From IMG/VR virus record IMGVR_UViG_3300030385_002649, positions 306,805 through 370,804 of that record: DNA of 64,000 bases, one strand, 5' to 3'. Positions 19,431 to 37,823 of this stretch are shown here, piece after piece. The position numbers and the translations under genes were made by a program. Within the stretch, counting starts at the first letter, position 1; each line of letters begins with the position of its first letter. The notes beneath the pieces were generated by a model, which saw only the letters and a program-made list of their open reading frames with translations, was not told the origin of the DNA and ran no database searches.

Positions 19431-19697
19431 AAGCATCAAGACTAGGCTCGGGTTTAGCGGGGCGCTTGGGGCGCTTGGGGTGTTTCTCTCCTGGCTTTAA
19501 TTTTCCAGAGCCACAACCCTTGCACTTGAAGTTGTTATGAGTCCTGTCGTAAGCCATATACAAATCATCGATTTTAGACCAGTTAATAGCCTCACATTTT
19601 GGACATGACACAATAAAAGCGGACGGACGCTTTCTTTCTACGTCCGTCCACTCGATGACTTTGGACTCTACTTGGGTAAACCCAATCCATAAGAGCA

Positions 19698-20123: not shown

Positions 20124-20154
20124 TTCGGTTTCCTCTCGAAAACCGTAAGATACA

Positions 20155-20826: not shown

Positions 20827-20846
20827 ATTTCTATATTTGTCAATAA

Positions 20847-21533
20847 CTATTCGTTATATGGCAAAGCCAACAGGTCTAGCCCACACAGGTTTTTCCAAAC
20901 CAACAGATAACCAAGACGCCCGAGGATTTGGTCCTCTAGAGAAGCATAAGAGTAGGCTTTTTCAATCAAGCCCATCGCAATTTTATGGTTGATTGTTGTA
21001 CTAAGCTCTAATTGCTCACAAGCTGGCCTTTTAAGATTGGCGGGGATGATGTCCATCTTCTTACTCCCCTTGCCGAAACTTGCAACCAGAACCCTAAGCA
21101 TTATCAAACGTTTCACTTGAGGCGTGACAGCTTTCTGGAAAAAAGCTAAGTATCCTTCGCGCCCTAACTCTCTAATTTTCTCGTTCATAAAATTTTGAAT
21201 TAAATCGTCGCATTTTTTCTCAACACCACCGATATAAGAACCGTTTCTCACAGCATGATAGAGACAAGACAATTTGAAAGGATACAAAATATTAGCGTAA
21301 TTCCCAAAAGGAACTTTAGCAAGGGCATTGTTAGGAACGCCCAGGGCCAGAGCTATCTTGGAAATTGACGTTTCCTCGTTTTTGACACTAACTTCAGAAT
21401 TTACCTTGGTTAGTTCGGTGCTATTCTCTGGCTGTTTGTATTTGGACAACTGATGGAGAATAGACTTATTGTTAGGCATGAAATAATTACTTCTAGATTT
21501 GAAGCCACTTATTCGTCTTGGCCTCGCAATCAA
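20847..21533 (-). CDS. Hypothetical protein
   Basis: Track ORF, 228 aa. Confidence 0.55.
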   Translation of the reverse strand: MIARPRRISGFKSRSNYFMPNNKSILHQLSKYKQPENSTELTKVNSEVSVKNEETSISKIALALGVPNNALAKVPFGNYANILYPFKLSCLYHAVRNGSYIGGVEKKCDDLIQNFMNEKIRELGREGYLAFFQKAVTPQVKRLIMLRVLVASFGKGSKKMDIIPANLKRPACEQLELSTTINHKIAMGLIEKAYSYASLEDQILGRLGYLLVWKNLCGLDLLALPYNE

Positions 21534-21924
21534 TCAACGTCCTTTCAATGATCGTGCTAATACGCGGAATCGGCTCGGCTTTTGCCTTTCTGATTTCGCC
21601 GCCGACGGAATAGTTGTTGCCCCCAGTACTGTTCCAGGTAGTAAATAGCCCGACAGAACCAGTCATTGGTTGGACTGAGGCTATTGAATCAGCCCAAAAA
21701 GAACCACCAGTGCCGCCTTGCAGCCGCACTCCGTTATTACTGAAGGGTGTAAATGTGCCAACTGGAATAACTGGAGTTGTAACGTTATTCACTGGGACTG
21801 GAGAATCATCTCTAATAGATATAGTGACAGTAGAGTCGACTAAAGTGTTTATAACTTCTCGATCTACTTCGCGACTAATTTCATCCGTCGCATTGTTAAT
21901 CGAGGCGAGTATTGGGTTAGTCAT
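21493..21924 (-). CDS. Short protein carrying T4 gp23 (major capsid)-like segments
   Basis: EISREVDREVINTL and IPRISTIIERTLIDCEAKTNKW resemble gp23 conserved segments (comparison from memory). Confidence 0.5.
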   Translation of the reverse strand: MTNPILASINNATDEISREVDREVINTLVDSTVTISIRDDSPVPVNNVTTPVIPVGTFTPFSNNGVRLQGGTGGSFWADSIASVQPMTGSVGLFTTWNSTGGNNYSVGGEIRKAKAEPIPRISTIIERTLIDCEAKTNKWLQI

Positions 21925-22460
21925 TGTTTGTTTATCCTATCTAAAATGAATTCGATTCTATCCTCCACACTCATCAGAGGAACAAAAACAGGCTCGTAGC
22001 CAAAATCCATGTAAGCTAAATTAAGTCTTTCTTGTAGTTCCTTACAATCCTCAATAGTTTCGATCCTACTAGTATCGCTACGAGGATCAAAAGGAGTCAC
22101 TAGGTCTAACAGGAAAACCATGTCGTAAGTTGATTTAGAGCACATGTCAGCAACCAATTTAGGGATTGCTGCGCCATGATGGGCAGCAAACCCATAGCCG
22201 TCATAAGCCCCTCGGTCATAGAAGGTCAAAGCTTTGCTTGTTTGTAGCTCTAGCTCTTGTTGTCGTTGAGAAATGAGCCATTGAAAAGACTCAAAATAAT
22301 GACGTCGCCATTCTAGGTCGCCATTTGGGACTAACGCTTGAATCGCTTCAATGACTTGGATCGCTGCTTCTGGGACAACATTATAGCCTTTTTTGGCCAA
22401 CCCGTCGATTACTGTTGATTTTCCAGAATGAGGAGCGCCGGTAAGAACTATCTTCTTCAT
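21921..22460 (-). CDS. NadR/Ttd14-like AAA (AAA_28) P-loop kinase
   Basis: IVLTGAPHSGKST, YNVVPEAA, TFYDRG, YDMVFLLD. Confidence 0.8.
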   Translation of the reverse strand: MKKIVLTGAPHSGKSTVIDGLAKKGYNVVPEAAIQVIEAIQALVPNGDLEWRRHYFESFQWLISQRQQELELQTSKALTFYDRGAYDGYGFAAHHGAAIPKLVADMCSKSTYDMVFLLDLVTPFDPRSDTSRIETIEDCKELQERLNLAYMDFGYEPVFVPLMSVEDRIEFILDRINKQ

Positions 22461-22830
22461 AAACGTTCAAATACAAGGCGCTCTAGCATTAATTTCATTT
22501 TGGTGTAATATTAGCGCATTCATTAGGACGCAGTGTTTTTTAAACTTTACCAGCCTAATGAAACTAGACAACCATAAACGCTTATGAGTTACCACATCAC
22601 GCCTTGGTCTTTAGTGTCTTGTTCTGTGGTAACTCTAAAGTCATGCTCGTACATGTTTTTGAGCTTTTCTAAATGCTCTGCTACGGTCAGCTTGTTTAAT
22701 TGCCACGAGTACCAAAACCGCCGCCTAGGCAAAATTGCTCCCAGCGACCCAACACTCGTTATCCCAGCTATTATTGATTCTGATCACAGTACTTTTCCAC
22801 ATTCGGACAGTTTTGCTAGAGTCTTCCTCA

Positions 22831-23061
22831 TCAGTCTTGAAAGAGGTTTCGGAGGTCGTCTGCTGCGGCTTTTCTTTGTTGGTCATGCTTAATAAGCCTA
22901 CTCTTCCATGGCTTACCCGTAGATTTGGGGACCTTAGACTGTACGTCTCCCAAGCTCCAAATAGACTTCAACTTCCTAGGTTTCACAACAACTGGCTGGA
23001 TCGTGATATTAAGTTTATACTCTGGTATGGTTGTGTTACGATCCCAATAACTCATACCCAA
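22831..23061 (-). CDS. Short protein resembling a gp23 capsid segment
   Basis: IPEYKLNITIQPVVVKPRKLKSIWSLGDVQ. Confidence 0.5.
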   Translation of the reverse strand: MGMSYWDRNTTIPEYKLNITIQPVVVKPRKLKSIWSLGDVQSKVPKSTGKPWKSRLIKHDQQRKAAADDLRNLFQD

Positions 23062-23450
23062 TGATTGATAGCCTCCACAGCTTTGTCTATTGTGGGATAT
23101 TGATCAGTGAAATACTTAATCCAAGGCCCATCGTTTTCCATCGAGAAAGCGAACACTGGAAGCTTCAACACATAAGAAGCGAAGAAAATCTCCATCGGAG
23201 TTCCAGCCATCGGAACATTTGGCAAATACGCCAAAACCCCGTCAGATTTCCTAACTTCCTCAAGATCAGCTTCTACAATCTCCACTTCATTAATGCCTGT
23301 ATAGGGCCTAAGAGTCGGGTCTAGAACACCAAATCCTAAAGCCGCTAACTTTGTGGTTGCTAATTGACGCCAGTGCAAAACTTGGTCGTCCCATTCTTCT
23401 TCTTTGCCAGAATAACAATGCATTGGGCCAGCTAAGTAGATCATCTTCAT
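23052..23450 (-). CDS. Nucleoside 2-deoxyribosyltransferase / RCL-like protein
   Basis: IYLAGP, ADLEEVRKSDGVLA, GTPMEIFFA. Confidence 0.75.
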   Translation of the reverse strand: MKMIYLAGPMHCYSGKEEEWDDQVLHWRQLATTKLAALGFGVLDPTLRPYTGINEVEIVEADLEEVRKSDGVLAYLPNVPMAGTPMEIFFASYVLKLPVFAFSMENDGPWIKYFTDQYPTIDKAVEAINHWV

Positions 23451-24553
23451 GCATTTAAAATACTAGGATTAACAAATGATAGTTTCTCAAGACCGTCCTT
23501 GTAAACATCTAACACATTGTACTCAGTTTCAAGGACACCCTTACAGATTTCTTGGATTTTTTCGATGCTGTTATCATCAAAGAGAGATACTCTACACAAC
23601 AATGACTCTATATAAGAAGATACAGTGTACTTTGGATCTCTCTTTGGATTGTTAGAATTAAAACTGTGGCCAGGACGCAGAGTAGCAAAAATGAGCATTT
23701 CTTGGTTTTCGCTGAAATAACTAAAGGCGATCTTTTTGCCGCCTTTTTCAACGTTTCCATTGATTACGTGTAGATCCGGCCCATAATTTGGGCTAAAATA
23801 AGTGCTAGGAAACCCAGCTGAACTAAAAATTCCGGCTATTAGTTGTAATTCTGTCATCATCAGGAGCCGACCCCACAATCAATCTATTCTTGATGTTTTT
23901 TAAAAACTCGACGGTTTTCTCGATAGAACCGTCATTATACAAAGAATCCTCAAAAAGCTTCAAAGAATCTAAATACCTAGGGCCGCATTCAGAAACGTTA
24001 GACCAAAATTGATGAAGAACATAAATCTTTAGCGTGCTAGTATGAACCCACAAGTTTAGGTAATGGTCCCATGCGTCATTATACTTGGAAACATAGAACA
24101 TGCTATGGTAGAAATCTCCGGTCTTTTCGCCAACTTGGTCGGCTGACCAGTCGTCCCCTGTTACTGCGTGAAAAGAATCATCTTCGCTAATTGAATAACC
24201 GGAATCGGTGATCATATCCCGAATTAAGTCTAGAACAAATTCACCTTCTCTACTCATTCATTCAATAGTGGGCTTTCCAGCCCTTCCACCTTCATTATCA
24301 TTTTTTCCAGCAACTTCAATTGGACGCGTGCAAGATCGAAACAATCATCGTTGTGGAGGTCAATTATGAGTTCTTCTCCAACCGGCACGGATATTTTCGT
24401 GCCCACCAAATTCATGATCAAGCCATAAGGGCCAGCATAAAATGTATAGATCCCATGATAAAGATGAGAACAAGCAACTTTAAACGTCACTTGCTCAGAG
24501 AGCCAATGTGATATTAACCTGGCCGAATTTGGCAATTTTGGGAGACAAGTCAT
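23447..24553 (-). CDS. Three hypothetical genes (23447-23878, 23823-24257, 24254-24553)
   Basis: Overlapping track ORFs. Confidence 0.55.
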
Positions 24554-24642
24554 GCCTTATTTAGCTTCCGGACCACTTATCTAGTACGAAAGAGTATAAG
24601 AACGCAACGGCGAAAATGCAAAGAATGACGATTATGATATTC

Positions 24643-25260
24643 CTATCGGGCGTCATGTTGTAAATCCCTAGTCAACTCAGTATAGAGCCGTTGGTGGCGG
24701 TGAGAAGCCTCGGACCAACTTTTCGGAGGTTCTAAACCTTCGATCGCCTCTTTGATAGCTGTCACCATTTGAATAGCACAAACGTCGAAAGGAACTCTAC
24801 CAACACCAGTTCCCATACCAGGAATCGCAATGCTACTAAAACCCTCTCGCATCGCGATTTGTGTTGCAGCTTTAGTAGCAAGATAGGTGTTGACGCTTCT
24901 ATTTCCCAAGATGGTTGGAATTCTCATAGTCGGAGCAGAAATCACAAAAGGGACCTGAGAATCTCCTGTAGAGAGAACCATGGCTTGACCAACTAGAAGC
25001 TCTCCCATCGTTTTTTCGTCAGCGATTCTTTCCTGAAGTCTTTCCTGAAGTCTCCTACCAAATTTCATGGTGATCAGCGCGTCAAGACCTCCATCCATGA
25101 ACCCGAAGCTGTTAGCTGGGCTGACTAGAGCGTCAACTTCTAAATCGAAAATTGATCCATGGTAAGTTTCTACATCGTGATCCGGGGGAAGCATTCCGTC
25201 GATTACTTTCTCCCATGCTGAAATCAGCCCTTGTTGAACGTCAGTTAATACAACTCTCAT
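24643..25260 (-). CDS. Macro domain (ADP-ribose binding/hydrolase) protein
   Basis: GSIFD..VDALVSPANSFGFMDGGLD, ISAPTM, IAIPGMGTGVG. Confidence 0.92.
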   Translation of the reverse strand: MRVVLTDVQQGLISAWEKVIDGMLPPDHDVETYHGSIFDLEVDALVSPANSFGFMDGGLDALITMKFGRRLQERLQERIADEKTMGELLVGQAMVLSTGDSQVPFVISAPTMRIPTILGNRSVNTYLATKAATQIAMREGFSSIAIPGMGTGVGRVPFDVCAIQMVTAIKEAIEGLEPPKSWSEASHRHQRLYTELTRDLQHDAR

Positions 25261-25466
25261 ATGGATTTTCCTATATCTGGCAGTTTCTTGTAGTCAGTGC
25301 AATAAAAACCATCGCCCTTGAAGATTACGCAGGATCCTTTCCCGATTAGTCTTCTTAATCTTGGTTTTTCGCATTCTGGACAGTCTGTTAGATGGTCTTC
25401 GTTCATTGCTTGGCGAATTTCGAACTCGTGTTTACACTCTTCGCATCTATAATCGTAAGTTGGCAT
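25257..25466 (-). CDS. FmdB family zinc-ribbon protein
   Basis: MPTYDYRCEEC.HEFE..Q.M.E..LT.CPEC...FKG.GFY.TDY. Confidence 0.9.
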   Translation of the reverse strand: MPTYDYRCEECKHEFEIRQAMNEDHLTDCPECEKPRLRRLIGKGSCVIFKGDGFYCTDYKKLPDIGKSI

Positions 25467-26008
25467 TATTTGTTTTCCTCTATGTCGTTTTCGACAGTCT
25501 TTCTGAGGTTCGGTGCTTGGAGTATCAGCTGCATCAGTTTTTCAAAGAAATCTGAAGAAAACGGATCTAAAGGAATGCGTCTCACATAATCCCCGTTTTC
25601 TTCATAAGCAGCCATAGTCATTGTTTTAAAAAAGACAGTGCAATCCGAGCCTCTAATCAACAAAGTCGGAGACACATGAAGGCGTCCGCTATCTGTAAAA
25701 TAATACTCGATCAATTTTTCCAGACTGTAAGGGTCTTCAAAATGACTGATCCTGATTGTGAACCCTTTTTCTTTAAAGGCGAAGTTGATCAAATTAGATA
25801 GTGTTTTCATGACAGTTTCCGTGAGAATGTTTTTAGGTCTACTAGCTGCGTCCGAGTAAATTTTACGGGCTCTAGTGCGCCTAGAAATCCTTCTAGAAAA
25901 CCAAGGTGCGAAATCACTACAGTCGCATCGACATACACGGTCTTTGAGAGGTATATGATACTGACCTTTCTCATGATGCAAATGTCCGCACCGACAAATT
26001 GGGCTCAT
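25466..26008 (-). CDS. CRCGH-WxS module fused to a ~130-aa C-terminal domain
   Basis: MSPICRCGHLHH...CRCDCSDFAPWFSRRI... Confidence 0.7.
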   Translation of the reverse strand: MSPICRCGHLHHEKGQYHIPLKDRVCRCDCSDFAPWFSRRISRRTRARKIYSDAASRPKNILTETVMKTLSNLINFAFKEKGFTIRISHFEDPYSLEKLIEYYFTDSGRLHVSPTLLIRGSDCTVFFKTMTMAAYEENGDYVRRIPLDPFSSDFFEKLMQLILQAPNLRKTVENDIEENK

Positions 26009-26076
26009 TAACACGCGACTGTCGTGGCTCATGTCGGTTTTAGATACCAAGAGTAGCTACATTAAAGAGGCATACA

Positions 26077-26643
26077 ATGGAGTTATTCATCATCGGAATT
26101 ACAGCTGGGGTCTTAACTTTTTCGGCAGCGATTTTTCTCATGCTACGCAAGTTTCGAAAAGAAGAAGATCTAGACCCCATTTCTAGAATAGCAAATAAGC
26201 TAGAAGACGTGCATGTTTTTAGGTGTGACAAAAAATGCGGTGGTTTCTGCGGCCTAGAAGAGAAAAAACTTCCACGGTTCGGCCTAGGAGTCAATCCAAC
26301 CCAAGCATACGAATACGCAGATCCTGTAGAACCGATTATTCTAGAAACGCCTGGCGGTAGGAAAATCCCACGGATTAAGCTAGCTAATGGGAAAATTTGT
26401 CACCGAGCTTTGCGCCACGTTGGACAAGACCGTGATGGCACAATCATAACTGAAACCTTAGTTCCTCTAGACAACACTTCAAAAGCTATCAAGCACGTCT
26501 TGACAGAAAAAGTCGTTGAAGAGGATAGGGAAAAGCGCAACGAGGAGAGGAAGCAAAGAGCAAAGGAAAGGGCTGGTTGGGTTACCAAATTGAGTCACCC
26601 CAAGAAGCCAGAAAAAGCCGACGAGAAACCCCCATCAGCTTAG
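26077..26643 (+). CDS. Membrane-anchored hypothetical protein
   Basis: SD AGAGG; N-terminal TM helix. Confidence 0.7.
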   Translation: MELFIIGITAGVLTFSAAIFLMLRKFRKEEDLDPISRIANKLEDVHVFRCDKKCGGFCGLEEKKLPRFGLGVNPTQAYEYADPVEPIILETPGGRKIPRIKLANGKICHRALRHVGQDRDGTIITETLVPLDNTSKAIKHVLTEKVVEEDREKRNEERKQRAKERAGWVTKLSHPKKPEKADEKPPSA

Positions 26644-27187
26644 CAACTTTTCCGCTAGTTTTATAAATGATCGTGCTGTACCATTCTTCAGCATCTCTGC
26701 AGCAACATCCATCAACAAGGCACGGATCGCAATGATCGATAGGAGCATCCTCGTGCAGGTTTAAATGATGGCCACATCTACAGACCCAATCTACATTAAT
26801 CGGCATGTTTCGTCCAGTAACTTGGTGAGTATTTGGCCGCAATCCATATATTATCGCTAAACCATCTTCTAAAACCAGTGCAAGAGCATTCATCACTAAT
26901 ACAAGATGAAATCGATCCTGACCATGATCGTTTGCTCTTAGATCGGCTAACGATAAGATGATCACCCCGAAAATGTCCACATCTACACTTCAACATCAAC
27001 CCTACCCAAAACGCCGTTTGTCCCACTCCCACCCGTTTTCCCAGATGAGGGTTTCAGAATACCACACTGAGAACTGCTCGCACGGACATCCTTCAATTCT
27101 GCAATAAGCATCGTCGTTGGTATCGATATGGTTCGGAATCTCATGTGAACATCGACAAAGTACTTCCATATCGAGTAAGATACGCAA
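26582..27187 (-). CDS. Three CRC-WxS micro-proteins (26582-26806, 26796-26996, 27002-27187)
   Basis: CRCGHHLNLH..CCCRDAEEWYS; CRCGHFRGDH..CSCTGFRRWFS; CRCSHEIPNH..CPCEQFSVWYS. Confidence 0.75.
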
Positions 27188-27196
27188 ATTTAAAGA

Positions 27197-27719
27197 ATGA
27201 AACTCTCAGAGCTATTCAAAGAAGAAAACTGGGGTTGGGCCGTTAAAGGAGACAAGAAACCTCCTGCTAAACCAAAACCCAAGAAAAAAAAGATGACTCA
27301 AGCCGAAATCGACCAAAGAATAGGAGAAAGACAAGAAGCCTTCTCCAATTCAACATTCCGTGATCGAGACATCGCTGACGAGTTGCTAGAAAAACAAAGA
27401 AAAGCGAACTTAGCCAAAAAGACTAATGCTCGTCGCCGATCTTCGACCTAGTAGCCTCCCACATTTTTTCAGCTTTAGCCAACCTAACCTGAGCGGAAGC
27501 TAAACGACGATTGTTCTTGGAAATCGCGGTTTTCCAACCCCTAACACCACCACCCCTATCCTTATCGGATTCGAGATCTCTAGTGTCAGCGCCCTGTTCC
27601 GCGCTAGTTAGCCCAGCCCGAAGCTTATCCAATTTATTCAACAACGCTGCTACTTCTGCGCGAGCGTTCATAAATTGAGTGCCAAAATCAGATTCGTGTA
27701 AGTGACTAAGCTTCATCAA
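27197..27719. CDS. Two convergent small proteins starting MKLS(E/H)L (27197-27451 plus, 27423-27716 minus)
   Basis: MKLSELFKEE.. and MKLSHLHESD.. Confidence 0.65.
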
Positions 27720-27868
27720 TTTATTTTTTTCTTAACCTCATCCTGATAGTATTGAAGATGGACGTCAAAAGAAATCCAACACTTAAAATGGGTGCAAAAA
27801 CATTTATAACAAGGAAACTTGCTGTCTTGCTCATGGTCTAGAATGTTGTGTCCGCATCTACATTGCAT
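27716..27868 (-). CDS. CRC-WxS micro-protein (50 aa), not in track
   Basis: MQCRCGHNILDHEQDSKFPCYKCFCTHFKCWISFDVH... Confidence 0.75.
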   Translation of the reverse strand: MQCRCGHNILDHEQDSKFPCYKCFCTHFKCWISFDVHLQYYQDEVKKKIN

Positions 27869-28054
27869 ATTTATTATCAACGATTTAAGCACACAATGAA
27901 AAGAGCAATTACTGATACAATTTGTAACACTATAAAAATAACCCTTATGAAGTCGAAACTAAAAACATATTTAGCGTTTCTAGCTAGAAAACTCGTAGGG
28001 TGTAGTTTTTCAGCGTGGAACCATTCTTTGGTAGGAGGCGGCAATGGGAAAATT

Positions 28055-29065
28055 CTAGGCCCTCCAAGCCGATATCAACCAACTACCATCTCCAAGCATT
28101 ATTATTCTCTTGTCGAGGGCTGATATTACCCCACCATGATTTTTAGCTGAGACCTTAAAAGAATGCCAAAGTGAGAAAGAAGAGCACTTACACATCCTCT
28201 CCCGGGCTTCTCCTTCTGTTTTGGCCTCGTCCCAACCCGGGAGCACATGATAACATCTTTCGCTATTTTCTAAGACCCCGGCATGCGACCGCATGGTATG
28301 TCCACACCGGCACCTTGGGATTCCACGCATATCAGAGACTGCCATCGTTAATCCTTTTTACAGCTACCCAATTCTGGCGTGATGGATCAGGTGGAGACTG
28401 AGATCGACGCGAGGGAGTTGGAGTTCGTTTCCAGTCATTGATTATCACGCGATGAAACCTTACCCTATAGCTAAACCAGCACTTAGACCAGGCATGCTGC
28501 AAGCGATCTAAACGACACCTACACATCTAGATTGTGAGGAATATAAGGAGCACAAACGATACCAGTGCTCAACTTAGAATTGCCTTTGTATCCCATCATC
28601 GCATTAGGGTGCTTAATCTGATAGCTAAACCAGCACTTAGAGTTTTCAAAACACCTACAGGACGTCTCATTCGTATGATGATGACGCCTACTATAAATGG
28701 GGTCGGAATAAACGGTCCATCTTCTGCTCAGCATGGCACCTACAACTAGAGAAAATCATTAAAAAACCCGTGGATAGTTATGTCTAAGATAGATTGTCTT
28801 ACTATGCCACATCGCAAATCTTACACAATCACAATCCGCACATTCATGGTTTGGGAAATCAAGTTCATGTGAGAGCCAATCAGTGTGACCGCAACGACAA
28901 ATTTGGTTTCCGCCTATCGGACCTGACATTATTCAACCTTCTGAATATTCTAATTATATTGCTAAACCATCTATTGTAAGCAACACAACCACAACCCACG
29001 CACGCTACCCATTTAGTGTTGCCAGGATTGGTGTGAGATCTTACATCGTGTCCACATCTACACAT
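28055..29065 (-). CDS. Five CRC-WxS units (28055-28330, 28332-28526, split unit 28519-28759, 28759-28929, 28880-29065)
   Basis: For example 28759-28929 MSGPIGGNQICRCGHTDWLSHELDFPNHECADCDCVRFAMWHSKTI (manual). Confidence 0.7.
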
Positions 29066-29477
29066 AAGACCCGAAAGCATAGCTGCGAGCATCAGGAAAA
29101 AAAGACGGATCTTCATGCCACTCTTTGCCATCATAATAGCTCTTTAATTGCTCAGTAGCCCACCCCAAAGCGGCAGGAGTAAAGTTTACTCCAGCAAAAG
29201 ACGCTAGTTCTAAACCGCACCGCCAAGCCTCGGCCTCGAAGAAACAACCATAGGGTTGCTCCGGATAAGAACGCCTAGGATCTAAACAATGACCAAGTTC
29301 ATGATAAAAAGAAATCAATCCTAACTCATCATCCTCATAGACTCCAAGACCAACCCAATCGTCTCCAGCAGAACAAGCAGAGTTTTTGTTAAATTGAGTG
29401 TCCTCAAGCATGTCTACCGACACCCCATGAAGATAAGCTATATAAGCGATATCGTCATACATAAAATTAATCGCCAT
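29058..29477 (-). CDS. HExxH metallopeptidase-like protein (ImmA/IrrE-like)
   Basis: ISFYHELGHC..FFEAEAW. Confidence 0.6.
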   Translation of the reverse strand: MAINFMYDDIAYIAYLHGVSVDMLEDTQFNKNSACSAGDDWVGLGVYEDDELGLISFYHELGHCLDPRRSYPEQPYGCFFEAEAWRCGLELASFAGVNFTPAALGWATEQLKSYYDGKEWHEDPSFFPDARSYAFGSYV

Positions 29478-29771
29478 TCACTTCCTTGTTAAAGAGAATT
29501 TCATAACTATACCACGGAAAAAACCTCTCGCAATCGCACCTCTTACACACTGGGTCTCGCCAACTATAATGATTCCGAGAAGAATGGCCACACCGACAAG
29601 GTAAACTAAGTAATTGCATATCTTCGACAGATCCTAATTGCAGTATGACCGTTCAAGTGATAGACAGATCCTACTAGAAAACCAAGTGTTAAATTGACAC
29701 GAGACTTTGTTGTCACCACGGAACCAAGCTGAAGAGTGAGACATCCACGTCCTGCCGCACCGACAAGTCAT
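29467..29771 (-). CDS. Two CRC-WxS micro-proteins (29467-29619, 29634-29771), not in track
   Basis: MQLLSLPCRCGHSSRNH..CKRCDCERFFPWYSYEI; MTCRCGRTWMSH..CQFNTWFSSRI. Confidence 0.7.
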
Positions 29772-30679
29772 AAAACCTTTAAGCACTCTGCCAAAGTATT
29801 ATGATGGATGTCCAGCACTTTCTGAAGAGGCTCTTGATATCCACCAGCTAGATTCCAAGCAATAGGAATGTCCATTCCCCTCAAGGTTTCAAACACAACC
29901 CGATCACGCTCAATTAATTGCTCAGTCGTCAAGGCACCGAATACCCCCAACATTTCATGACAAGGATCATCACAATGAGGATCAGCGCCAGCTTGAAAGA
30001 GAACAATATCACATCCAGCAAAATCAGAGAGAATCTCAGGAAGAGATAATACCCAGCGTGCACCAGAACCCTTCTTCCAAGAAAAGCTCTGACGTCCACC
30101 CCACATGCCGTCGTGGTAATTAAATCTAATATCACCACCGACAGTATAATGATGAATACGGTTGTCATCAAGCTCTTCCTTTTTTACTAACCACTCAATT
30201 ATCGTATCAGTACCATTACCATAATGATGATCAAGATCAAGGATCCCAACCTTATCGACGGTCTTCAACAACTCAACAGCGGTCACCATCAAGCCATTGA
30301 AAGTACAAAACCCCATCGACCTATCATGGGTCGCATGATGAAAACCACTAGTCGGGCTCATCGCAATAGTCTTATTCTCAAGAGCATATTTAGCAGCAGC
30401 TAAGAAACTCCCACTAGTCCAAGGAAGAGTCTCAGCAATACTCCTCAACTTGTTTCCAAAGCCGTTATTCTTTAGACAATCTAAAATGCCCTCAACGTGT
30501 CGCTTCTCATGAACCGCACAAAACTGCTCTACAGTTACGGGGTCGAAATCGCTAACAACTTCAATGGATTGTTTCTGCTCTAACCATTGCTCAACTAGAA
30601 CTTTTGGCTTTTTAGCACTAGGAGAGAAACTCGTCTCTGCTGTGGTGGCTTGGTTTTCGTTATAGAAGACTTTTAACAT
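29768..30679 (-). CDS. Histone deacetylase family (Zn-dependent amidohydrolase) protein
   Basis: SGFHHA, GFCTFNG, ILDLDHHYGNGT, QAGADPH..D, LAGGY. Confidence 0.93.
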   Translation of the reverse strand: MLKVFYNENQATTAETSFSPSAKKPKVLVEQWLEQKQSIEVVSDFDPVTVEQFCAVHEKRHVEGILDCLKNNGFGNKLRSIAETLPWTSGSFLAAAKYALENKTIAMSPTSGFHHATHDRSMGFCTFNGLMVTAVELLKTVDKVGILDLDHHYGNGTDTIIEWLVKKEELDDNRIHHYTVGGDIRFNYHDGMWGGRQSFSWKKGSGARWVLSLPEILSDFAGCDIVLFQAGADPHCDDPCHEMLGVFGALTTEQLIERDRVVFETLRGMDIPIAWNLAGGYQEPLQKVLDIHHNTLAECLKVL

Positions 30680-31142
30680 GTGAGTTGCCTTGCATTCTGT
30701 GGGCTAGTTGTGTATAATTTTCTGGATAGTCATAAGTTTTGACGTATTTGGCTACTAAATTGAGCCGAACACTATACCACAGGTTGAACCAATTGCCATC
30801 GGTCCCTCTCAGTTTGTCGCTGCCATCCATCATTGCGATTACCTGTTTTCTTTTGCCATTCTAGATCCTCTACGCCCGGCCGCCCTTAGCGCCGCACGCC
30901 TTTTAGAAAACAGCTGCAAACTGACCCAACAATAATTGGGCCAAGCAAGAGGATGAGGATGATAAGATGTCCTATCGGGATAGACGTGGCAGATGGCTGC
31001 AATTCTTCTATCCAATGTCGTTCATACGTTATTGAGCATCTGCATTTACATAGCTTCAATGAGTTTGCCCATCACATAAGCAAAAGCAGCGACTGCGGCA
31101 ATGGTTATAATAGCTTCTGGCCAACCCATAACAACTCTCCTG

Positions 31143-31652
31143 TTAAGCGTCAGATACGCCCGAGCGAACCCTTATTCTTTTTAAACTAAGGTCCATGTAC
31201 AACCGACAACTATACCACCTCTTAAAAACCTCACAATGAAACATTTCACACGGAAGAGGAGCATCAATACTAATAATATGACGATGACGGCTTAGGCTGT
31301 GATCGCACCTACAATCATTAAGATGATTTCTAAATATTAGCACTTAGAAATCCGAAAGTTCAGCCTAATAGCGTCGCTGAGCCAAGGTTTAAATTCGAAA
31401 CAAGAGCACATTCCTACTTTGCAATTCTCATTTCTAGAGAAATAAGAGTGTTCCTTATGAGAAGACCAAAACCCATGGCCACACCTACATATTTCAGATA
31501 AGAACATTTTCCGGTAGCCTCTTTAACGTTTTCAACACCCTCGACCTATTATACCAAATTATACCAGAACGCCACGGCCTAGATATGTGGGACATAAGCC
31601 CATGCCCATGTTCTTCCCATTTCAAGCCACATTTACAACGTGGGAAGTTCAT
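31143..31652 (-). CDS. Three CRC-WxS micro-proteins (31143-31343, 31337-31507, 31494-31652)
   Basis: CRCDH..WYS; MFLSEICRCGHGFWSSH..CKVGMCSCFEFKPWLS; MNFPRCKCG..WYN. Confidence 0.7.
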
Positions 31653-32029
31653 TCTGGTAGAGGGTCGAATTTAGGAATAATGCTGAGAATGTGCCCGTCG
31701 AAGTCAACAATATCGTCATCGAAACTACTAAGGATCTGAGCATGACGCTCCTCGGTTGACTTCTGAGAGTTTTTCACGATGAGGATCTCTAAACTATACC
31801 AAAATTCGTCGTCAGATCTGAAGAACTTCCTCTTCATAGCATCAAACGGCTCAATCATTTAATTGGAGCCTTGACATAAATCAAAAAACTATACCAACAA
31901 ATGTTGTTAGACTTGACGACAGTATCAGAAACGCGCATTTTAATCCTTCATAATCATTATCAACATTGCAGAATAACTAACGACAAACACGAAACAAATG
32001 AGCCCAAAAATTGTCACTTCACTCCTGGC

Positions 32030-34440
32030 GAAGTATGTTTCGAACGGTGCGCATTCAAGACCTTATGCTTGCTATGAGCATGACCAACCAGATAGCTAAA
32101 CCAACAACCAACTCTGGCTGGCCGACGCTTACCACACTTACAAGGAATTGGTTGCCTGATGAAAGCCTTACAGATGTTTTTGCCATACACTATCCTCTAG
32201 ACTCCCAACGGATGCAATAACTAAACCAACAAGCAGGCAAGGCGCTCAATGGCGTCATTATTGCACGAGCACCATTGATTGCGCATTTGCAATGGTTGTA
32301 AGCTTCAGAATCAAAATCGTTATAAAGCAGCAATGCGCAACAGTGTCTAATCATTAGGCGTTCTCTTCAGACCCAAAGACAAATCTTTTAAATTTTTTGA
32401 CCCTAGTGCTATACCAACAATCTCCGAACACAATATGGCCGCGACCAGTAGTAAGAATGCAGCACCGACAAAGAACGTCTGGACTCCTCATACGCCGCAC
32501 GCTTCTCTTTTAGCCTTTTTAGCTAGTTCTTTAGCACGACCATCATACCTTTTTACCCGCTGATCGTCGCCAACATGATAAGAAAACCACCTATTCCACC
32601 ATTCATAATTGCCGTTGTTCCTAGGGAGTATCATGTCGCCAGTTAGTCGCCAATTATCCATGATGCCAAAACCAAATCCTGAAAGAAATCCAACTTCTAA
32701 AATCCACACAGTTGCATTTAGGTGAAATACATTGATAATTGTCGGTGTTCTCATATTGAACCTTATGATAGTCGGAAGCATGGCTACACCGACAGTGAAA
32801 GGAAGAATCAAACCGACGTAGAATTCTTCCTTTCACGTCCACAAATTCATAGCACCGAATTTTTTCATCCGGTGAAGATTGCTATTCCGGACGACTAAAG
32901 ATTTTCTAGCAATAGCGTGAGAGTGCCAAGGCTTAAAGCTTTCGCACTCACAGCCCTCACCCAAACAAGTCCTCATGCCTTCGGTGGTGGTCACCCAATC
33001 ATGTTCAGCTTTTGTAGTATCAAGATAATACCATCTTTTAATGTCAGAGTGACCACACCTACATATCGTAATCATACTGTGGCTCCGAGTTTCCATGTGC
33101 GCCAAAAATGTCTGCGACAAATTCTATAGCTAAACCAACATTTAATAGTATAGTGCTGAGTCTCATAAAGATTTGGACATCTGCAGCCCATCATCGTGCT
33201 CATGGCCACAGCCTCTTCCATATCCCCGTTTGGCGGATCCGATAACTATGCCAACAAAATTTTGTATGGTGTGGCATAAAAACGTAAGAGCACCTACAAA
33301 TTCGGATCATATTGGTCCCAAACCCAAATCCTATAGCTATACCAACAACCAGCAAAAGAATGAGCACCTAGTAGTTTGTTTCTAGAGCCAAGTGGCATAT
33401 GTTGAGTCTCATAAAGATTGGGGCATCTACATTCCATTATTGTGCACAAACTTCTTCTATGCGGTTCGCAAGAGCCCTCAAATATCCAACTGCCTTTGTG
33501 CTGTCCGCGTCACTGATGATGGTGCAACCTTTATCCTTCAGTCTCTTGATTGACCCCCAGCTCTTCATTGAGCCGCCCATAGCGAACGTGAAAGAGAAAT
33601 CAGTCTTAACAAGATCTCCAGAATTTATGGTGAGATTCTTACCACACAACTTGTTAACATCACCAATTAAGCTCGGATCGTCAACTTCAATGAGAAGCTT
33701 AAGCTTGACAGACCTTTCAACGCTCTCCCACACTTGCTCACTATACCAGGCTCTCATGCGCACCAAACCTTGCTGTTAGGCCAATGACTACATCGACAAT
33801 TAACGCTCGGCTTGGGCGGAGAGTTAGTACTGCAAAAAAATCTTTAGTTCTACTCATTAAAAATCCTGTATGAGTACCAACAAGTGCCAGCCCAATGATA
33901 ATAAATTTCGGCTAGCCAAATCGGTCCCATATATGCCGTTTGACATCGACACCGAGGCAGCGCAACGTTGCTAACGGTCTCTTTCATAAAGTTTAGACCA
34001 TCTCCTCATCCGCGCAGCCTTTAACTTATTCTCGTTGATAAAATACGAATACCAACACCCATTAGTACGAGCAAAATGGTCCTCGTCCACCTTCCCACAT
34101 CTACAACGAAAGCTCACTGCCACCTCATCACAAAATGATGAAAATGGATTTTATTGCTAAACCACCAATTTCTTCTTCGAACAACGGTGTTAATACAAGC
34201 CATCTAACAACCTCTCCAAAACAGCGTCGGACCAAACTTGATAACTATACCAATAATTTAAAAAATCATGGCCACGGTCGGAGTGCTCCTTGCCACACCT
34301 ACAAGCTAAGACACCTTCCATATCCAACTCACTTTCAATTTATGGATTCTATAACTAAACCAGCAATCGCTTTCGGAACACCAATGATCATAAACAGTTA
34401 GCCATTTTCCTGATCTTCCGCATCTACAGGGAAAACTCAT
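32030..34440 (-). CDS. Cluster of mostly short-form CRC-x-H-x-CW(Y/F/H)SYRI micro-proteins (32190-32354, 32354-32491, 32654-32842, 32833-33075, 33072-33203, 33200-33310, 33294-33437, 33850-33987, 33971-34117, 34190-34321, 34306-34440)
   Basis: Manual translation; TAATG, ATGA and GTGA start-stop overlaps. Confidence 0.72.
33437..33766 (-). CDS. ~100-aa protein beginning with the WYS half-module (CRCSH lies upstream in another frame)
   Basis: MRAWYSEQVWES... Confidence 0.6.
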   Translation of the reverse strand: MVRMRAWYSEQVWESVERSVKLKLLIEVDDPSLIGDVNKLCGKNLTINSGDLVKTDFSFTFAMGGSMKSWGSIKRLKDKGCTIISDADSTKAVGYLRALANRIEEVCAQ

Positions 34441-34554
34441 CCGATTTTATTCTTGTAAGCGTTTCTTGCGGCTAAATTATGCTTAATTCTAGAACTAAAC
34501 CAGGGTTTATAAACAGGACAATCACACTTCCTACAACAAGCGAAATTGTAATCG

Positions 34555-34818
34555 TTATTGTCCATAATTCCACTTCAAAACAAGAGCGCTATACCACCAC
34601 CTATATTGCTTACGCCCGCAACCACAACGGCACATGCCTAGTCTCCCACTAAAACTTCTTCGCCTTAACCCTTGTGGTGGTTTCCAACTATGTCGGCTAT
34701 CAACATAAATATGACCACTAAACCAAAGCCTATATTGTTGACAATTACAATTGTAGCAATGATAAGTATTAATATGATACCGATGCAAGTTAACGTCATG
34801 CCCACATCTACAGTTCAT
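34555..34818 (-). CDS. Tandem two-module CRC-WxS protein
   Basis: MNCRCGHDVNLH..WFS....MCRCGCGRKQYRWWYS. Confidence 0.7.
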   Translation of the reverse strand: MNCRCGHDVNLHRYHINTYHCYNCNCQQYRLWFSGHIYVDSRHSWKPPQGLRRRSFSGRLGMCRCGCGRKQYRWWYSALVLKWNYGQ

Positions 34819-35161
34819 TAAAACCGATACTTTCGATCATGATGAATAAACCTACTAAACCACCAATTGTGATTCCCACATTCGCAACACGACACGGCCA
34901 GATGTGAGTCACGTTATCAACACCGGAGTGAAGGCCAATCGCGTGGCCGCACCTACATCCTCGTCCCACTCATCATAATCGCTTACCGCAAATGGACGCT
35001 GAATACCACACGCCCTATGCATCACAAGGACACCCGTCAGCTTTACACCGATACTGATAAGAATGAGGAATACTGCCAGCCGCCATATCAAAAGTCGACC
35101 ACACCATGTGAGGGCCAACAGCGTGACCGCAACGACAATCCCTCGCCCAATCAGCACTCAT
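34818..35161 (-). pseudogene. Two disrupted CRC-WxS copies: one frameshifted (~34818-34970) and one with an in-frame TAG at 35015-35017 (34973-35161)
   Basis: CRCGHAVGPH...CPCDA*GVWYS versus neighbour CPCDEWGVWHS. Confidence 0.6.
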
Positions 35162-37823
35162 TAGAGAACCTCGCCATAATAAATGCGATCAAGTTTCATT
35201 TTACTAAGCTTTTCCCTAATAATACACTCACTATGCCAAACCCCCCACTCATCACAAGGGCAATCAGAGGCTTGGCAAGCCATACTAATTTCTACACTAA
35301 CAATGCCATCACAACAAATATGATCGCCAACTCCATGATCGCAACGACATTTAGACATTTGGTAACGCCTTCGCCAGCCCCGCCAGCCTCTCCCTACAAA
35401 TCCTCAAACTGTACCACCACTTAAATCGAGCACACCGGCAAGACTTTTCCGAGCATAGAGAAGTGGGGGTGGGGCCGTTATAAGAAAGATCGTGGAAACC
35501 CCAATCATGCCCACAACGACACGCGTGTCTAACCACCGAATTATCGATCATAATCCGGCAACCCCCAAAAATTCAACGTCTTATAAATCTTCATACTGTA
35601 CCACCAACCATAACGCTTACAGTCACAAGACGCGCACGCATATGCGGACTGGCCACCAGCATGATGCTGAAACCACTCATGATCACACCTACATTTAGTT
35701 GAACCAGAAAGTCGCGCCATAGGTTTTAAATACCGTGTTGAACGCGAACTCATAAAATTTCCGCGATATACTCCTCGAAGCAGTACTGAACGCGTTAAAG
35801 ACCATTTCGAGTCTGATGCCTCCACTTACCCCGCCGCTTCGAGTACCACAAAGACCCACTAAACCCTAACTCTCAAGCTGTACCACCACCTTAAATAAAA
35901 GTCCGGATCACAAGACATTGTGCAAGCCACGGTCCCACCTTCTCATAGCGTCCGTTTCCATTGCTTTAACCGTTGCTTTAACCGCATCACATTCAATTTT
36001 CTCCCACATCCTAATCCTCTTAAACTTAAAACGAATCCGAAAACTAAACCAAAACACTCGCGTAACGTCACTTCTCATTCGAGATCTCCAAGCAACCTAC
36101 GGCGCTCACTGTTAGCATCTTGCAAAATAATGTTACTATACCAACCATTCCAATAATCACACTTAAGACAAATCACACACTTAACGCCCATGAGTCCACC
36201 TCGATGCAGGAGCTCTCCCTTGTGTGACGAGAAAGCACACCCACACCTACAAGTAAACCAGTTCCACGAAACAGATGGTTTAGCATTAGTCATACCAGTT
36301 TGCCATAATAACGCTTCAGATTGCGCTGGATATAAAAAACGCTCTTACTATACCAACTTCTAAAATTGTAACACTTACAAAGCGTACAGTTAGACTCACG
36401 AAGATCTTTAAACTTATGAGAATGCCAATAATGCCCACACCTACAAACCCTCACCGTTAATCGCCTCCCATTCCCTATGCTCCAAACGTCTTTTGTGCTC
36501 CACTAACCTTCTCGCGTACGTGGAAAATTAAATCATCTAATTCTACTACTATACCACGACACATATCTAGGACACCCACAGCGACACTCAACAGCGGAAC
36601 CAACATGCTGAAACCACCCATGTCCACACCTACAAGTCTTCATGGGTACCACTCCTCCATCTCCCTATGTGCCCCAACTATAACGCCTAGCCCAAACAGA
36701 ACGGCTAAACCAAGACTTAAAAGAATCACAAGTGCCCCAAGACCCATCCTGCTGATGGAACCGCCAAGCATAACCACACCTACAAACCGGAAATCTAAAA
36801 ACCCTATCGCCCATCACAGTCACCGCACCTAACCACCGCGCGTGCTGTTTTTCGTATACCTCGCCTTATTTCTTTGCGATATCTGAATCCCCCTACTATA
36901 CCACGCCTCATGAGACTCACAGTAACATATGTCACAAGCATACAAACCCGTCCCCGCCCCCCGAATCTTGCTATGTTCCCACCACTGATGACTACACCGA
37001 CAATTTCTAAAAGAATGATTACTCATTCCTGCAGCAAACAAGCCCTCAACCACAACCTAGCCGAGTACCACCTCTTAAAATCACACGGGACCAACTCACG
37101 ATGATGGGTAACAAACCCAAGACTACACCTACAACGACTCATAACCCCATAAACCTCATCCGCCAACTTAGCACAAGTATCACACTGGCACATCGCACAT
37201 CGCAAGAAGGCAATCCTGATAAAACCACCTCCCAGGACCACGATCCTTATCCCCAAATACTCGATCGATCTGAACCCGATGGCGCTCAAACTCGCGCCCC
37301 CTCTCGATCAAGTCCAAAACATCCGAATAGGGGGAGCTTTTAACCGACATATTGAACCAAAGCCCGAGTTGAACGCGACATTAGGAGTTCCTCCTGCTCG
37401 CCCACAACATAAACCCCACCATTCTAGAATACCAAGACCTAAACTCCCCACACTTACTAGCGCAACCGAGAACACCAGCACACACCCCACCCACGCTCCC
37501 CGGAAGAACATGACAAACCGACTTATGCCCACACCTACACACAACAGCCATTTCTCCTCCTCCTAATCTCCAAGGTCGCCTTCTTCACCCACCACACCTT
37601 ATGACTATACCAACAATGAAGAGTAGGATCCCCATGATAAAGAACATACTCAGACCAACCATGATTACGAGTATTAGTCCAAACATGACCACACCTACAC
37701 AAAATCGGGCGAGATCCTCTCATATATCCTCCTCAAACGAGCTAACCTACTAAACCAACAATTCCTAAGAAAAAGGTTAGTATCCCTCACTGAGTCATGA
37801 TCATAACCACACCTACAAATCAC
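35161..37823 (-). CDS. Eleven further CRC-WxS micro-proteins (35161-35358, 35351-35551, 35541-35720, 36075-36293, 36290-36454, 36533-36643, 36665-36814, 36829-37026, 37023-37142, 37381-37551, 37535-37723) plus 37695-37823
   Basis: For example 37381-37551 has SD GGAGGAG-aa-ATG, MAVVCRCGHKSVCH..SKCGEFRSWYSR; 36290-36454 VRVCRCGHYWHSH..CTLCKCYNFRSWYS. Confidence 0.75.

What the first reader, a model, noticed from the sequence alone, without database searches (positions are those of the whole stretch)
21493..28620. Three free-standing fragments resembling T4-type major capsid protein gp23
21493-21924 has EISREVDREVI and IPRISTIIERT..EAKTNKW; 22831-23061 has IPEYKLNITIQPVVVKPRKLKSIWS; 28519-28602 has MGYKGNSKLSTGIVCAPYIP. 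From memory these match gp23 segments EIMLEINREVV, EMGFRIDKQVIEAKSRQLKAAYS and VGYKG..MDAGIYYAPYV. Capsid proteins are known triggers of defence systems (Lit/Gol peptide, CapRel). Inference: these mini-genes might be capsid-epitope decoys or assembly modulators rather than debris.
Basis: partly seen in the sequence, partly recalled or inferred. Interest (0 to 1): 0.7.

Follow-up and report, generated by a model that had tools for sequence, protein, structure and literature searches.

The report
Capsid-protein snippets inside small phage genes
Three small reading frames in a 371-kb marine phage genome really do carry short, old, diverged pieces of the phage's own type of major capsid protein; related phages keep such capsid snippets in small accessory proteins under selection, a habit I found no description of, but whether these three copies still do anything is not known.

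Summary
The window is the last 64 kb of a 370,804-bp phage record that has one complete gp23-type capsid gene 170 kb away. F1 (21493-21924), F2 (22831-23061) and F3 (28519-28734), all on the minus strand, each have Gp23 as best Pfam hit. With a capsid profile they beat every reversed-sequence decoy in the genome. F2 and F1 together cover capsid residues 273-342, split by about 1 kb. F1 also holds the genome's only other 'VQPM'. F3 carries residues 443-468 as the tail of one unit of a 40-copy array of tiny zinc-finger-like genes. Two more fragments lie outside the window. Synonymous sites are saturated, so the pieces are old.

Related huge phages hold stronger examples. One fusion gene has a syntenic ortholog under purifying selection (pN 0.35, pS 0.87). 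An exhaustive search found dozens of small metagenomic proteins carrying the capsid's Gol-homologous segment joined to unrelated sequence.

So the class is real and partly selected. The window's copies are its most eroded members: orphans, with no confident fold for F1 and F2 apparently broken. The decoy idea remains untested. Expression could not be checked.

The parts
21493..21924 (-). F1, a 143-aa ORF. Its ATG overlaps the stop of the upstream AAA_28 gene. It is an orphan protein.
   Evidence: ORF; only itself among 5.8 billion proteins; codon log-odds 0.139, a value reached by only 1% of shadow ORFs. ESM Atlas model pLDDT 0.40.
21838..21885 (-). F1 aa 14-29, 'DEISREVDREVINTLV'. Matches capsid residues 327-342 (second part of region B).
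21646..21693 (-). F1 aa 78-93, 'ADSIASVQPMTGSVGL'. Matches the core of capsid region A (residues 100-115), which aligns with part of T4's Gol region.
   Evidence: E 0.008 against best decoy 0.1. (VQPM only here and in the capsid gene). (44% over 34 aa to the cyanophage S-IOM18 capsid protein)..
21921..22460 (-). AAA_28 P-loop kinase-like gene lying between the two halves of region B.
   Evidence: PF13521, E 7.7e-27.
22589..22886 (-). Two short ORFs (22725-22886 and 22589-22732) in other frames downstream of F2. Codon usage is gene-like, and by eye they hold pieces of the mini-gene family motif ('ECW', 'FWYSWQ'). Probably a frameshifted family unit.
   Evidence: The family assignment is my inference.
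22831..23061 (-). F2, a 76-aa ORF with a TTG start that overlaps the end of the upstream deoxyribosyltransferase-like gene.
   Evidence: codon log-odds 0.124.
22939..23043 (-). F2 aa 7-41. Matches capsid residues 273-307 (first part of region B, '..RKLK..WSL').
28519..28734 (-). F3, a 71-aa chimeric ORF: one unit of the C-R-C...C-W-F-S-Y mini-gene family followed by a capsid-derived tail.
   Evidence: Its codon score is ambiguous (0.002).
28537..28608 (-). F3 aa 43-66, 'PNAMMGYKGNSKLSTGIVCAPYIP'. Matches capsid residues 443-468 (region C).
   Evidence: E 1.3e-4; E 0.0037; also matches T4 and S-IOM18.
28621..28659 (-). F3 aa 26-38, 'CRCFENSKCWFSY', the family-unit part. Its last 21 nt are repeated exactly at 28467-28487 in the next ORF.
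   Evidence: (repeat D5).
28332..28526 (-). The next family unit ('MCRC...SKCWFSY'). It starts 8 nt before F3's stop, in another frame, so the capsid piece lies between two units.
25466..38138 (-). Array of more than 40 small ORFs of the C-[RK]-C-G-(H)...W-[FY]-S family, in which F3 is embedded.

Best explanation
F1, F2 and F3 carry short relics of this phage's own kind of gp23 major capsid protein.
- F2 and F1 together are capsid region B (residues 273-307 and 327-342), separated by about 1 kb that holds a kinase-like gene.
- F1 also carries the 'VQPM' core of region A, the segment that aligns with T4's Gol peptide.
- F3 carries region C (residues 443-468) as the tail of one unit of a large array of tiny zinc-finger-like genes.

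Shown:
- The pieces are homologous to the capsid protein.
- They are old, because synonymous sites are saturated.
- They lie in fast-changing accessory DNA, not in the structural module.
- Capsid fragments in small ORFs recur in related huge phages.
- At least the region-A type is kept by purifying selection and is widespread in uncultured phages.

Inferred origin: 50-200-bp pieces of the capsid gene were copied by illegitimate recombination into arrays of small genes, giving chimeric small proteins.

Inferred working of the class: a short, probably flexible capsid peptide is displayed on a small folded carrier. It stands in for, or competes with, the real capsid protein at whatever binds that segment. 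For region A, by homology with T4 Gol, that would be EF-Tu and Gol-dependent sensors.

The window's three are the most eroded members. F1 is an intact, gene-like ORF. F2 and F3 look partly broken. Present activity is therefore doubtful.
For: Homology:
- Gp23 is the top Pfam hit for all three ORFs.
- The clade profile ranks all the genome's fragments above every decoy.
- A broad region-A profile gives F1 E 0.008, and E 4e-8 for a further fragment at genome 297053-297340.
- VQPM occurs only in the capsid gene and in F1.

Age: third-codon-position identity to the phage's own capsid gene is 0.30-0.38, while amino-acid identity is 40-62%.

Recurrence:
- Relative G001 has three strong fragments in 151-163-aa ORFs (E 7e-22, 1e-18, 3e-9).
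- G006, G012 and G022 have one each.
- One G001 fragment gene has a tandem paralog aligned over 96 aa.
- Capsid fragments are the commonest short hits within a genome, but a portal fragment and others exist.

Selection:
- The G001 region-A gene and its syntenic ortholog P0005 have codon-position identities of 0.62/0.67/0.32, with pN 0.35 against pS 0.87. The capsid-derived part is the more conserved (pN 0.26).
- An exhaustive search gave 221 hits, including dozens of complete-looking small proteins with the region-A module on non-capsid sequence.
- P0008, P0012 and P0005 are internal genes on their contigs.

Peptide on a carrier: in the AlphaFold model of the G001 gene, the C-terminal domain is confident (pLDDT 86-93) and the capsid-derived part is not (50-69).

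Gol mapping: for the alignment, PMC3014915 for Gol binding EF-Tu, and my memory for the T4 coordinates 93-122.

Coding look: F1 and F2 score like genes.
Against: - F1 has no relative anywhere: none in IMG/VR or GenBank phages and none in the 5.8-billion-protein collection. F2 and F3 were not searched separately. The DNA of window 19000-31000 has no match in five related records. So no selection test is possible on the window's ORFs themselves.
- F1 has no confident predicted fold.
- F2 appears to be followed by frameshifted pieces, and F3's codon score is ambiguous.
- The individual matches of F1 and F2 are weak (E 0.45 and 0.79 with the clade profile). The aa-identity versus third-position contrast is inflated for such short pieces, because they were found by amino-acid similarity.
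- Region-B and region-C modules were not shown to be widespread. The one search for region C found only partial capsid genes.
- Complete relative G003 has no clear fragment, and the Pfam scan found none in G004.
- No binding partner is shown. The EF-Tu co-folding job gave no answer.
- Expression is untested.
Confidence: 0.55

Rival explanations
1. Inert debris. The segments are leftovers of old partial duplications of the capsid gene. They happen to sit in open frames, have no function, and are on their way to being lost.
For: - F1 is an orphan, and the region's DNA is absent from five related records.
- F1 has no confident fold.
- F2 is followed by out-of-frame, coding-like pieces, and F3's codon score is ambiguous.
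- Fragments differ in length and identity between genomes, as in a decay series.
- Relative G003 has no clear fragment, and the Pfam scan found none in G004.
Against: - Amino-acid similarity survives although synonymous sites are saturated. The short length and the way the pieces were found weaken this argument.
- F1 and F2 have gene-like codon usage and tight gene packing.
- Better-preserved members of the same class are demonstrably under purifying selection and widespread.
- Phage genomes usually delete useless DNA quickly (general knowledge).
Confidence: 0.3
2. Remains of a second capsid gene, or of capsid-gene flanks carried along by mobile elements. On this view a duplicated or foreign gp23 copy was invaded and broken up by self-propagating mini-gene units or homing-endonuclease events, and the pieces were then scattered by rearrangement.
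For: - Each fragment sits next to a unit of a multi-copy family. In this genome that is the C-R-C...W-[FY]-S family. In G001 and G006 it is other families.
- Region B is interrupted at about the same place in this genome (F2 | F1) and, by eye, in G001's fragment gene.
- Homing endonuclease genes lie next to capsid genes: segD in T4, and a faint LAGLIDADG hit in L168.
- In G006, G012 and G022 the fragment lies 2-6 kb from the capsid gene.
Against: - No endonuclease domain was found in the mini-gene families.
- The fragments are not collinear along the genome: on the minus strand region C precedes region B, and F1 has its region-B piece before its region-A piece.
- No capsid lineage is closer to the one fragment tested, G001's region-A gene, than the clade's own: at most 63% in the exhaustive search, and all 81 clade proteins are equidistant from every fragment.
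- The scenario does not explain selection on the fusion genes.
Confidence: 0.1
3. Chance resemblance of short peptides to conserved capsid motifs.
For: Each Pfam hit is below the family cut-off. F1 and F2 have genome-wide E-values near 1.
Against: - Three ORFs within 7 kb share the same best family.
- All fragments outrank all decoys.
- F2 and F1 are collinear.
- F1 has two independent capsid motifs.
- F3 is significant on its own.
- Much stronger cases of the same kind exist in relatives.
Confidence: 0.03

Closest known systems
Gol peptide of T4 gp23 with the Lit protease (e14 prophage)
   Same: Capsid region A aligns with the T4 segment around residues 93-122. The review PMC3014915 calls the Gol region the most conserved part of gp23. 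It says a 29-residue peptide suffices to bind EF-Tu domains II-III and to license Lit cleavage. F1 keeps the 'VQPM' half of it. The fragment at genome 297053-297340 keeps the other half. Many small metagenomic proteins keep all of it.
   Different: In T4, Gol is part of the capsid protein itself and is the trigger of the defence. Here the segment is encoded apart from the capsid gene, on small carrier proteins, in phages of unknown hosts. No binding to EF-Tu or to any sensor is shown (one search gave no answer). The window's other two pieces (regions B and C) have no known peptide activity.
gp24 vertex protein, the classical gp23 paralog of T4-like phages
   Same: It arose by duplication of the major capsid gene within the phage genome (T4 genes 23 and 24).
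   Different: gp24 is a full-length HK97-fold structural protein encoded next to gene 23. The window's pieces cover 16-35 residues each, are scattered in accessory DNA, and cannot form a capsid fold. Only one full-length Gp23 match exists in this genome.
Capsid-sensing bacterial immunity (CapRel SJ46, Avs-type STAND sensors)
   Same: These systems show that conserved capsid and portal proteins are read by host sensors (PMC9712102, listed; bioRxiv 10.64898/2026.01.04.697583). The proteins whose fragments recur here, capsid and in G001 portal, are among those sensed.
   Different: No phage-encoded capsid-fragment antagonist of such sensors came up in my literature searches. Nothing here links the fragments to any defence system.
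Genes in pieces and homing-endonuclease-associated rearrangements in T4-like phages
   Same: In T4, the topoisomerase is split by the mobA-60.1 insertion (PMC3014915), and segD lies beside gene 23. Both show that conserved phage genes get interrupted or flanked by selfish elements. Region B here is interrupted by about 1 kb of foreign genes.
   Different: In those cases the pieces together still make the functional protein at its normal locus. Here a complete capsid gene exists elsewhere, the pieces are far diverged from it, and no endonuclease was found beside them.

Membership tests
Gp23 major capsid protein (Pfam PF07068), as a capsid protein | Score over the curated cut-off (24.4 bits) and a match over most of the 376-position profile. 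| tested here: not met
   F1 scores 13.6 bits (profile 180-198), F2 11.1 bits (126-156) and F3 14.1 bits (303-325). The real capsid gene scores 265.5 bits over positions 1-347.
Gp23-derived segment (homology of the piece, not membership as a capsid protein) | Profile similarity to a defined capsid segment beyond what decoys reach, supported by order or co-occurrence of motifs. | tested here: met
   (all fragments above all reversed decoys). (VQPM unique to the capsid gene and F1). F2 and F1 are collinear. F3 has E 1.3e-4 to 0.0037.
Gol-type peptide (T4 gp23 segment that binds EF-Tu) | Homology to the whole ~29-residue Gol segment. | tested here: inconclusive
   F1 aligns only with the C-terminal half ('..VQPM..G..GL'). 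F2 and F3 come from other capsid regions. The whole segment is present in G001's fragment gene and in many small metagenomic proteins.
Gol-type peptide (T4 gp23 segment that binds EF-Tu) | Binding to EF-Tu, and licensing or blocking of a Lit-type protease. | not testable with these tools
   The co-folding job of E. coli EF-Tu with G001's fragment protein gave 'no answer' (score 0.01). This is no evidence either way.
Phage anti-defence decoy or mimic protein | Expressed during infection, binds a host sensor or its target, and relieves a defence. | not tested
   No RNA run was listed. The host and its defences are unknown.
Pseudogene or gene remnant | Disrupted frame and no constraint on the protein sequence. 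| tested here: inconclusive
   F1 is an intact ORF with gene-like codon usage. F2 appears to be followed by out-of-frame coding-like pieces. F3 is ambiguous. Constraint cannot be measured without orthologs.
C-[RK]-C-G-(H)...W-[FY]-S mini-gene family of this phage (F3's N-terminal half) | The 'CRC' and 'CW[FY]S[YR]' motifs at family spacing, and a place in the tandem array. | tested here: met
   F3 aligns with 32 paralogs. It shares an exact 21-nt repeat with the next unit. It matches family members elsewhere in the genome.

The most novel reading that the evidence does not exclude
T4-like and huge phages encode a class of 'capsid-mimic' mini-proteins. These are short, conserved capsid (and portal) segments displayed on small carrier domains and made apart from the virion genes. 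They would occupy the host factors or immune sensors that read those segments, before or while the real capsid protein appears. One example would be a Gol-like module that sits on EF-Tu without licensing a Lit-type protease. On this reading, F1-F3 are active or recently retired members covering capsid regions A, B and C.
Probability: 0.2. Interest if true: 0.85.

Novelty: new variant of a known kind. Interest (0 to 1): 0.6.

Why it matters
The major capsid protein is one of the phage proteins that bacterial immune systems read. T4's Gol segment is the classic case of a capsid peptide that triggers abortive infection.

If phages keep copies of exactly such segments on small separate proteins, and keep them under selection, that points to an unrecognised layer of phage-host or phage-assembly biology built from capsid mimicry. 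It also gives a concrete, cheap test: do these mini-proteins bind EF-Tu, the scaffold, or a sensor?

Even if they prove to be debris, the result is useful in two ways. It shows how new small phage genes are born from pieces of essential genes inside fast-turning gene arrays. It also warns annotators that a Gp23 Pfam hit on a 100-200-aa protein need not be a truncated capsid gene.

Tried and rejected
- **Relatives of the window's region.** IMG/VR scans and GenBank-phage tblastn with F1 found nothing. The 5.8-billion-protein search found only F1 itself. An IMG/VR scan with the AAA_28 neighbour found nothing. The DNA of window 19000-31000 has no match in five related records. No dN/dS is therefore possible for F1-F3.
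- **Foreign donor.** I asked whether the fragments come from a different capsid lineage. All 81 clade capsid proteins are equidistant from every fragment. For G001's region-A gene, GenBank phages reach at most 44%, and the exhaustive search shows no lineage above 63% over ~43 aa. No closer donor was found.
- **Multi-copy domain derived from the capsid protein.** I tested whether the 'DPxFxP' domain fused to G001's fragments is itself capsid-derived. hhalign gave probability 0.5% and the BLAST hints were E 0.1-0.7. Rejected as unsupported.
- **Sheath-fragment neighbour.** A weak tail-sheath hit on the neighbour of G001's region-B gene turned out to come from a diverged tandem paralog of the capsid-fragment gene.
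- **Region-C module search** with G001's gene returned only partial or frameshifted capsid genes.
- **EF-Tu co-folding** gave no answer.
- **Structure searches.** There is no PDB match for the mini zinc-finger family. There is no PDB or BFVD match for G001's fragment protein.
- **Expression.** Only DNA runs of the source sample hold the sequence.
- **Assembly error as the cause of the frameshifts near F2.** Rejected: two assemblies of runs from the same sample show no differences.
- **Silent cassettes for gene conversion of the capsid gene.** Rejected because nucleotide identity is only 50-58%.
- I rebuilt the alignment without it.

Full report
**Where the window lies**

The window is the last 64 kb (306805-370804) of a 370,804-bp IMG/VR virus record with direct terminal repeats. 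That record has one complete gp23-type major capsid gene at 157269-158804. It encodes 511 aa and scores Pfam Gp23 E 8.5e-80, with a scaffold-like gene upstream. The nearest GenBank capsid protein is only 39.7% identical and belongs to a 595-kb uncultured phage. IMG/VR holds at least 159 relatives with capsid proteins 75-90% identical. The sequence comes from a marine metagenome.

**The observation**

The three ORFs exist as described, all on the minus strand:
- F1, 21493-21924, 143 aa
- F2, 22831-23061, 76 aa
- F3, 28519-28734, 71 aa

Each has Gp23 as its best Pfam family, with E 0.045, 0.26 and 0.032 at profile positions 180-198, 126-156 and 303-325. All are below the 24.4-bit cut-off.

Against the phage's own capsid protein:
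- F1 aa 14-29 matches residues 327-342 (9/16).
- F2 aa 7-41 matches 273-307 (14/35).
- F3 aa 46-66 matches 448-468 (13/21).

I built a profile from 81 clade capsid proteins and ran it on all 6,234 six-frame ORFs of the genome. After the capsid gene itself, the hits were:

| Hit | Position | E-value |
|---|---|---|
| New fragment, outside the window | genome 297053-297340 | 5e-4 |
| F3 | window 28519-28734 | 0.0037 |
| Second new fragment (capsid 35-73) | genome 223727-223969 | 0.24 |
| F1 | window 21493-21924 | 0.45 |
| F2 | window 22831-23061 | 0.79 |
| Best reversed-sequence decoy | - | 4.1 |

A broad profile of that capsid segment gives it E 0.008, against a best decoy of 0.1, and gives the 297-kb fragment E 4e-8. 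'VQPM' occurs nowhere else in the genome's six frames except the capsid gene.

F2 and F1 are on the same strand, 1 kb apart and in capsid order. Two assemblies of runs from the same sample reproduce 20800-23500 exactly. The resemblance is therefore real homology.

**Anatomy**

I call the conserved capsid segments A (about residues 79-127), B (272-345) and C (424-468).

*Region B.* It is split here: F2 carries its first part and F1 its second. Between them lie an AAA_28 kinase-like gene (21921-22460) and two short out-of-frame ORFs. Those two ORFs have gene-like codon usage, and by eye they carry pieces of a family motif.

*F3.* It is a chimera:
- Residues 26-38 ('CRC...SKCWFSY') are one unit of a family of tiny cysteine-rich genes.
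- The capsid piece follows as a tail.
- The next unit starts 8 nt before F3's stop, in another frame.
- A 21-nt exact repeat encoding 'SKCWFSY' brackets the capsid piece.

That family forms an array of more than 40 ORFs from about 25.4 to 38.1 kb. The fragment at 223.7 kb also follows a 'W-S-W-Y-S' motif.

The surrounding genes are accessory ones, not structural genes:
- zincin-like protein
- deoxyribosyltransferase-like protein
- macro domain protein
- deacetylase-like protein
- thymidylate synthase

**Age**

Between each fragment and the capsid gene, third-codon-position identity is 0.30-0.38, about random. Amino-acid identity is 40-62%. The copies are therefore old. For pieces this short, the contrast is inflated by the way they were found.

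**Relatives**

The closest complete relative, G001 (395 kb, capsid protein 86% identical), has three far stronger fragments, each at the N-terminus of a 151-163-aa ORF:

| Region | Capsid residues | Identity | E-value (clade profile) |
|---|---|---|---|
| A | 59-127 | 52% | 7e-22 |
| C | 424-463 | 77% | 1e-18 |
| B | 272-317 | 50% | 3e-9 |

- G006, G012 and G022 have one fragment each, 2-6 kb from their capsid genes.
- G003 has no clear fragment, and the Pfam scan found none in G004.
- In G001 and G006 the non-capsid part of the ORF belongs to a multi-copy family of that genome. It shows no detectable capsid homology.
- G001's region-B gene has a tandem paralog aligned over 96 aa, in which the capsid-like part has faded.
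- Among short intragenomic matches of large genes, capsid fragments dominate. G001 also has a 110-aa ORF made of two copies of a portal segment, and this genome has a 65-aa ORF with a piece of a 702-aa protein.

**Selection**

An exhaustive HMMER search of 1.84 billion representatives with G001's region-A gene gave 221 hits. One of them, P0005, matches over the whole length (50% identity, E 3e-33). It lies in the same gene neighbourhood, with a NUDIX gene downstream.

Between the two genes, codon-position identities are 0.62/0.67/0.32, with pN 0.35 against pS 0.87. The capsid-derived part is the more conserved (pN 0.26, against 0.42 for the rest). That is purifying selection on the fusion gene.

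Among the other hits, about 65 small proteins carry the region-A module at one end or in the middle of sequence that is not capsid-like, in several recurring architectures. Some of the shorter ones may be truncated capsid genes. P0008 and P0012 are not:
- P0008 lies between ribonucleotide reductase and uracil-DNA glycosylase genes on three contigs.
- P0012 is an internal gene on nine contigs.

No capsid lineage is more than 63% identical to G001's fragment, so a closer foreign donor is not in sight.

In an AlphaFold model of G001's gene, the carrier domain is confident (pLDDT 86-93) and the capsid-derived part is not (50-69). The model has no PDB or BFVD match.

**What region A is**

Aligned with T4 gp23, region A covers the T4 segment around residues 93-122. 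From memory, this is the Gol peptide. The review PMC3014915 states three things:
- Gol is a 29-residue segment.
- It binds EF-Tu domains II-III and so licenses the Lit protease.

A co-folding test of EF-Tu with G001's protein gave no answer.

**Status of the window's three ORFs**

- F1 is an orphan in 5.8 billion proteins. It has no confident fold. It does have gene-like codon usage (log-odds 0.139, reached by 1% of shadow ORFs) and overlaps its neighbours as phage genes do.
- F2 scores like a gene but appears to be followed by broken pieces.
- F3's codon score is ambiguous.
- No relatives of the region were found, and no RNA run is listed.

**Conclusion**

The three ORFs hold genuine, old relics of the capsid gene, captured in small accessory ORFs. 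They belong to a recurrent class of capsid-fragment genes. At least the region-A type of that class is selected and widespread, and I found no description of it in the paper library.

The most likely working of the class is a capsid peptide displayed on a small carrier that mimics the capsid protein at one of its partners. That is inference. The window's copies are the most eroded members. The odds are roughly even between residual function and decay.

Noticed in passing
window 25466-38138, minus strand (members also elsewhere in the genome, e.g. genome 49.8, 72.0 and 213.7 kb): A tandem array of more than 40 tiny ORFs (42-96 aa) sharing 'CRCGH..H..CxxCxC..F..W[FY]S', or a shorter 'CRC...CW[FY]SY' form. 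Starts and stops often overlap. The array coincides with strongly negative GC skew. Pfam gives only weak FAM221 hits. An AlphaFold model (pLDDT 69) has no PDB match. The function is unknown.
   Followed up: partly
window ~38000-48000: G+C jumps from about 0.43 to 0.55 and the GC skew changes sign at 38-40 kb. The ORFs at 43.7-54.6 kb have no Pfam hit. Two tRNA genes lie here: Arg-tct at 41807-41882 and Lys-ttt at 43418-43489.
   Followed up: partly
own genome outside the window: 297053-297340 (+) and 223727-223969 (-): Two further capsid-derived fragments. The first matches capsid residues 79-105 (E 4e-8 with the region-A profile) and lacks 'VQPM'. The second matches residues ~28-95 (E 0.24, above all decoys) and follows a 'WSWYS' motif.
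   Followed up: partly
G001 292834-293166 (inside L107): A 110-aa ORF made of two tandem copies of a segment of the T4-type portal protein (portal aa 245-308, 34-36% identity). So portal fragments also occur as small ORFs.
   Followed up: partly
own genome 237056-237253 (-), outside the window: A 65-aa ORF carries a 32-aa piece (50% identity) of the 702-aa ORF 173671-175779. By eye the motif looks like one from ribonucleotide reductase.
   Followed up: no
L168 5100-8493: In a 169.6-kb JGI contig of the same clade, the capsid gene is called as two ORFs (303 + 197 aa) because of a frameshift at capsid residues ~308-311, close to where region B is interrupted in the window. The next gene (574 aa) has a faint LAGLIDADG hit. 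This may be a sequencing error.
   Followed up: partly
window 20155-30679: A cluster of accessory genes surrounds the fragments: zincin-like protein (20155-20826), AAA_28 kinase-like (21921-22460), nucleoside deoxyribosyltransferase-like (23052-23450), macro domain (24643-25260) and histone-deacetylase-family protein (29768-30679). The set looks like host-takeover or counter-defence genes.
   Followed up: no
L170 3118-3657 (P0008) and relatives: Small proteins with an 'NP[DE]YDP' N-terminal domain followed by the capsid region-A module sit in nucleotide-metabolism operons, between ribonucleotide reductase small subunit and uracil-DNA glycosylase, in uncultured phages. This suggests early rather than late expression.
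   Followed up: partly
window 63776-64000: Short tandem repeats (9-nt unit x 12 copies, 18-nt unit x 3.5 copies) lie at the very end of the record, next to the terminal repeat.
   Followed up: no
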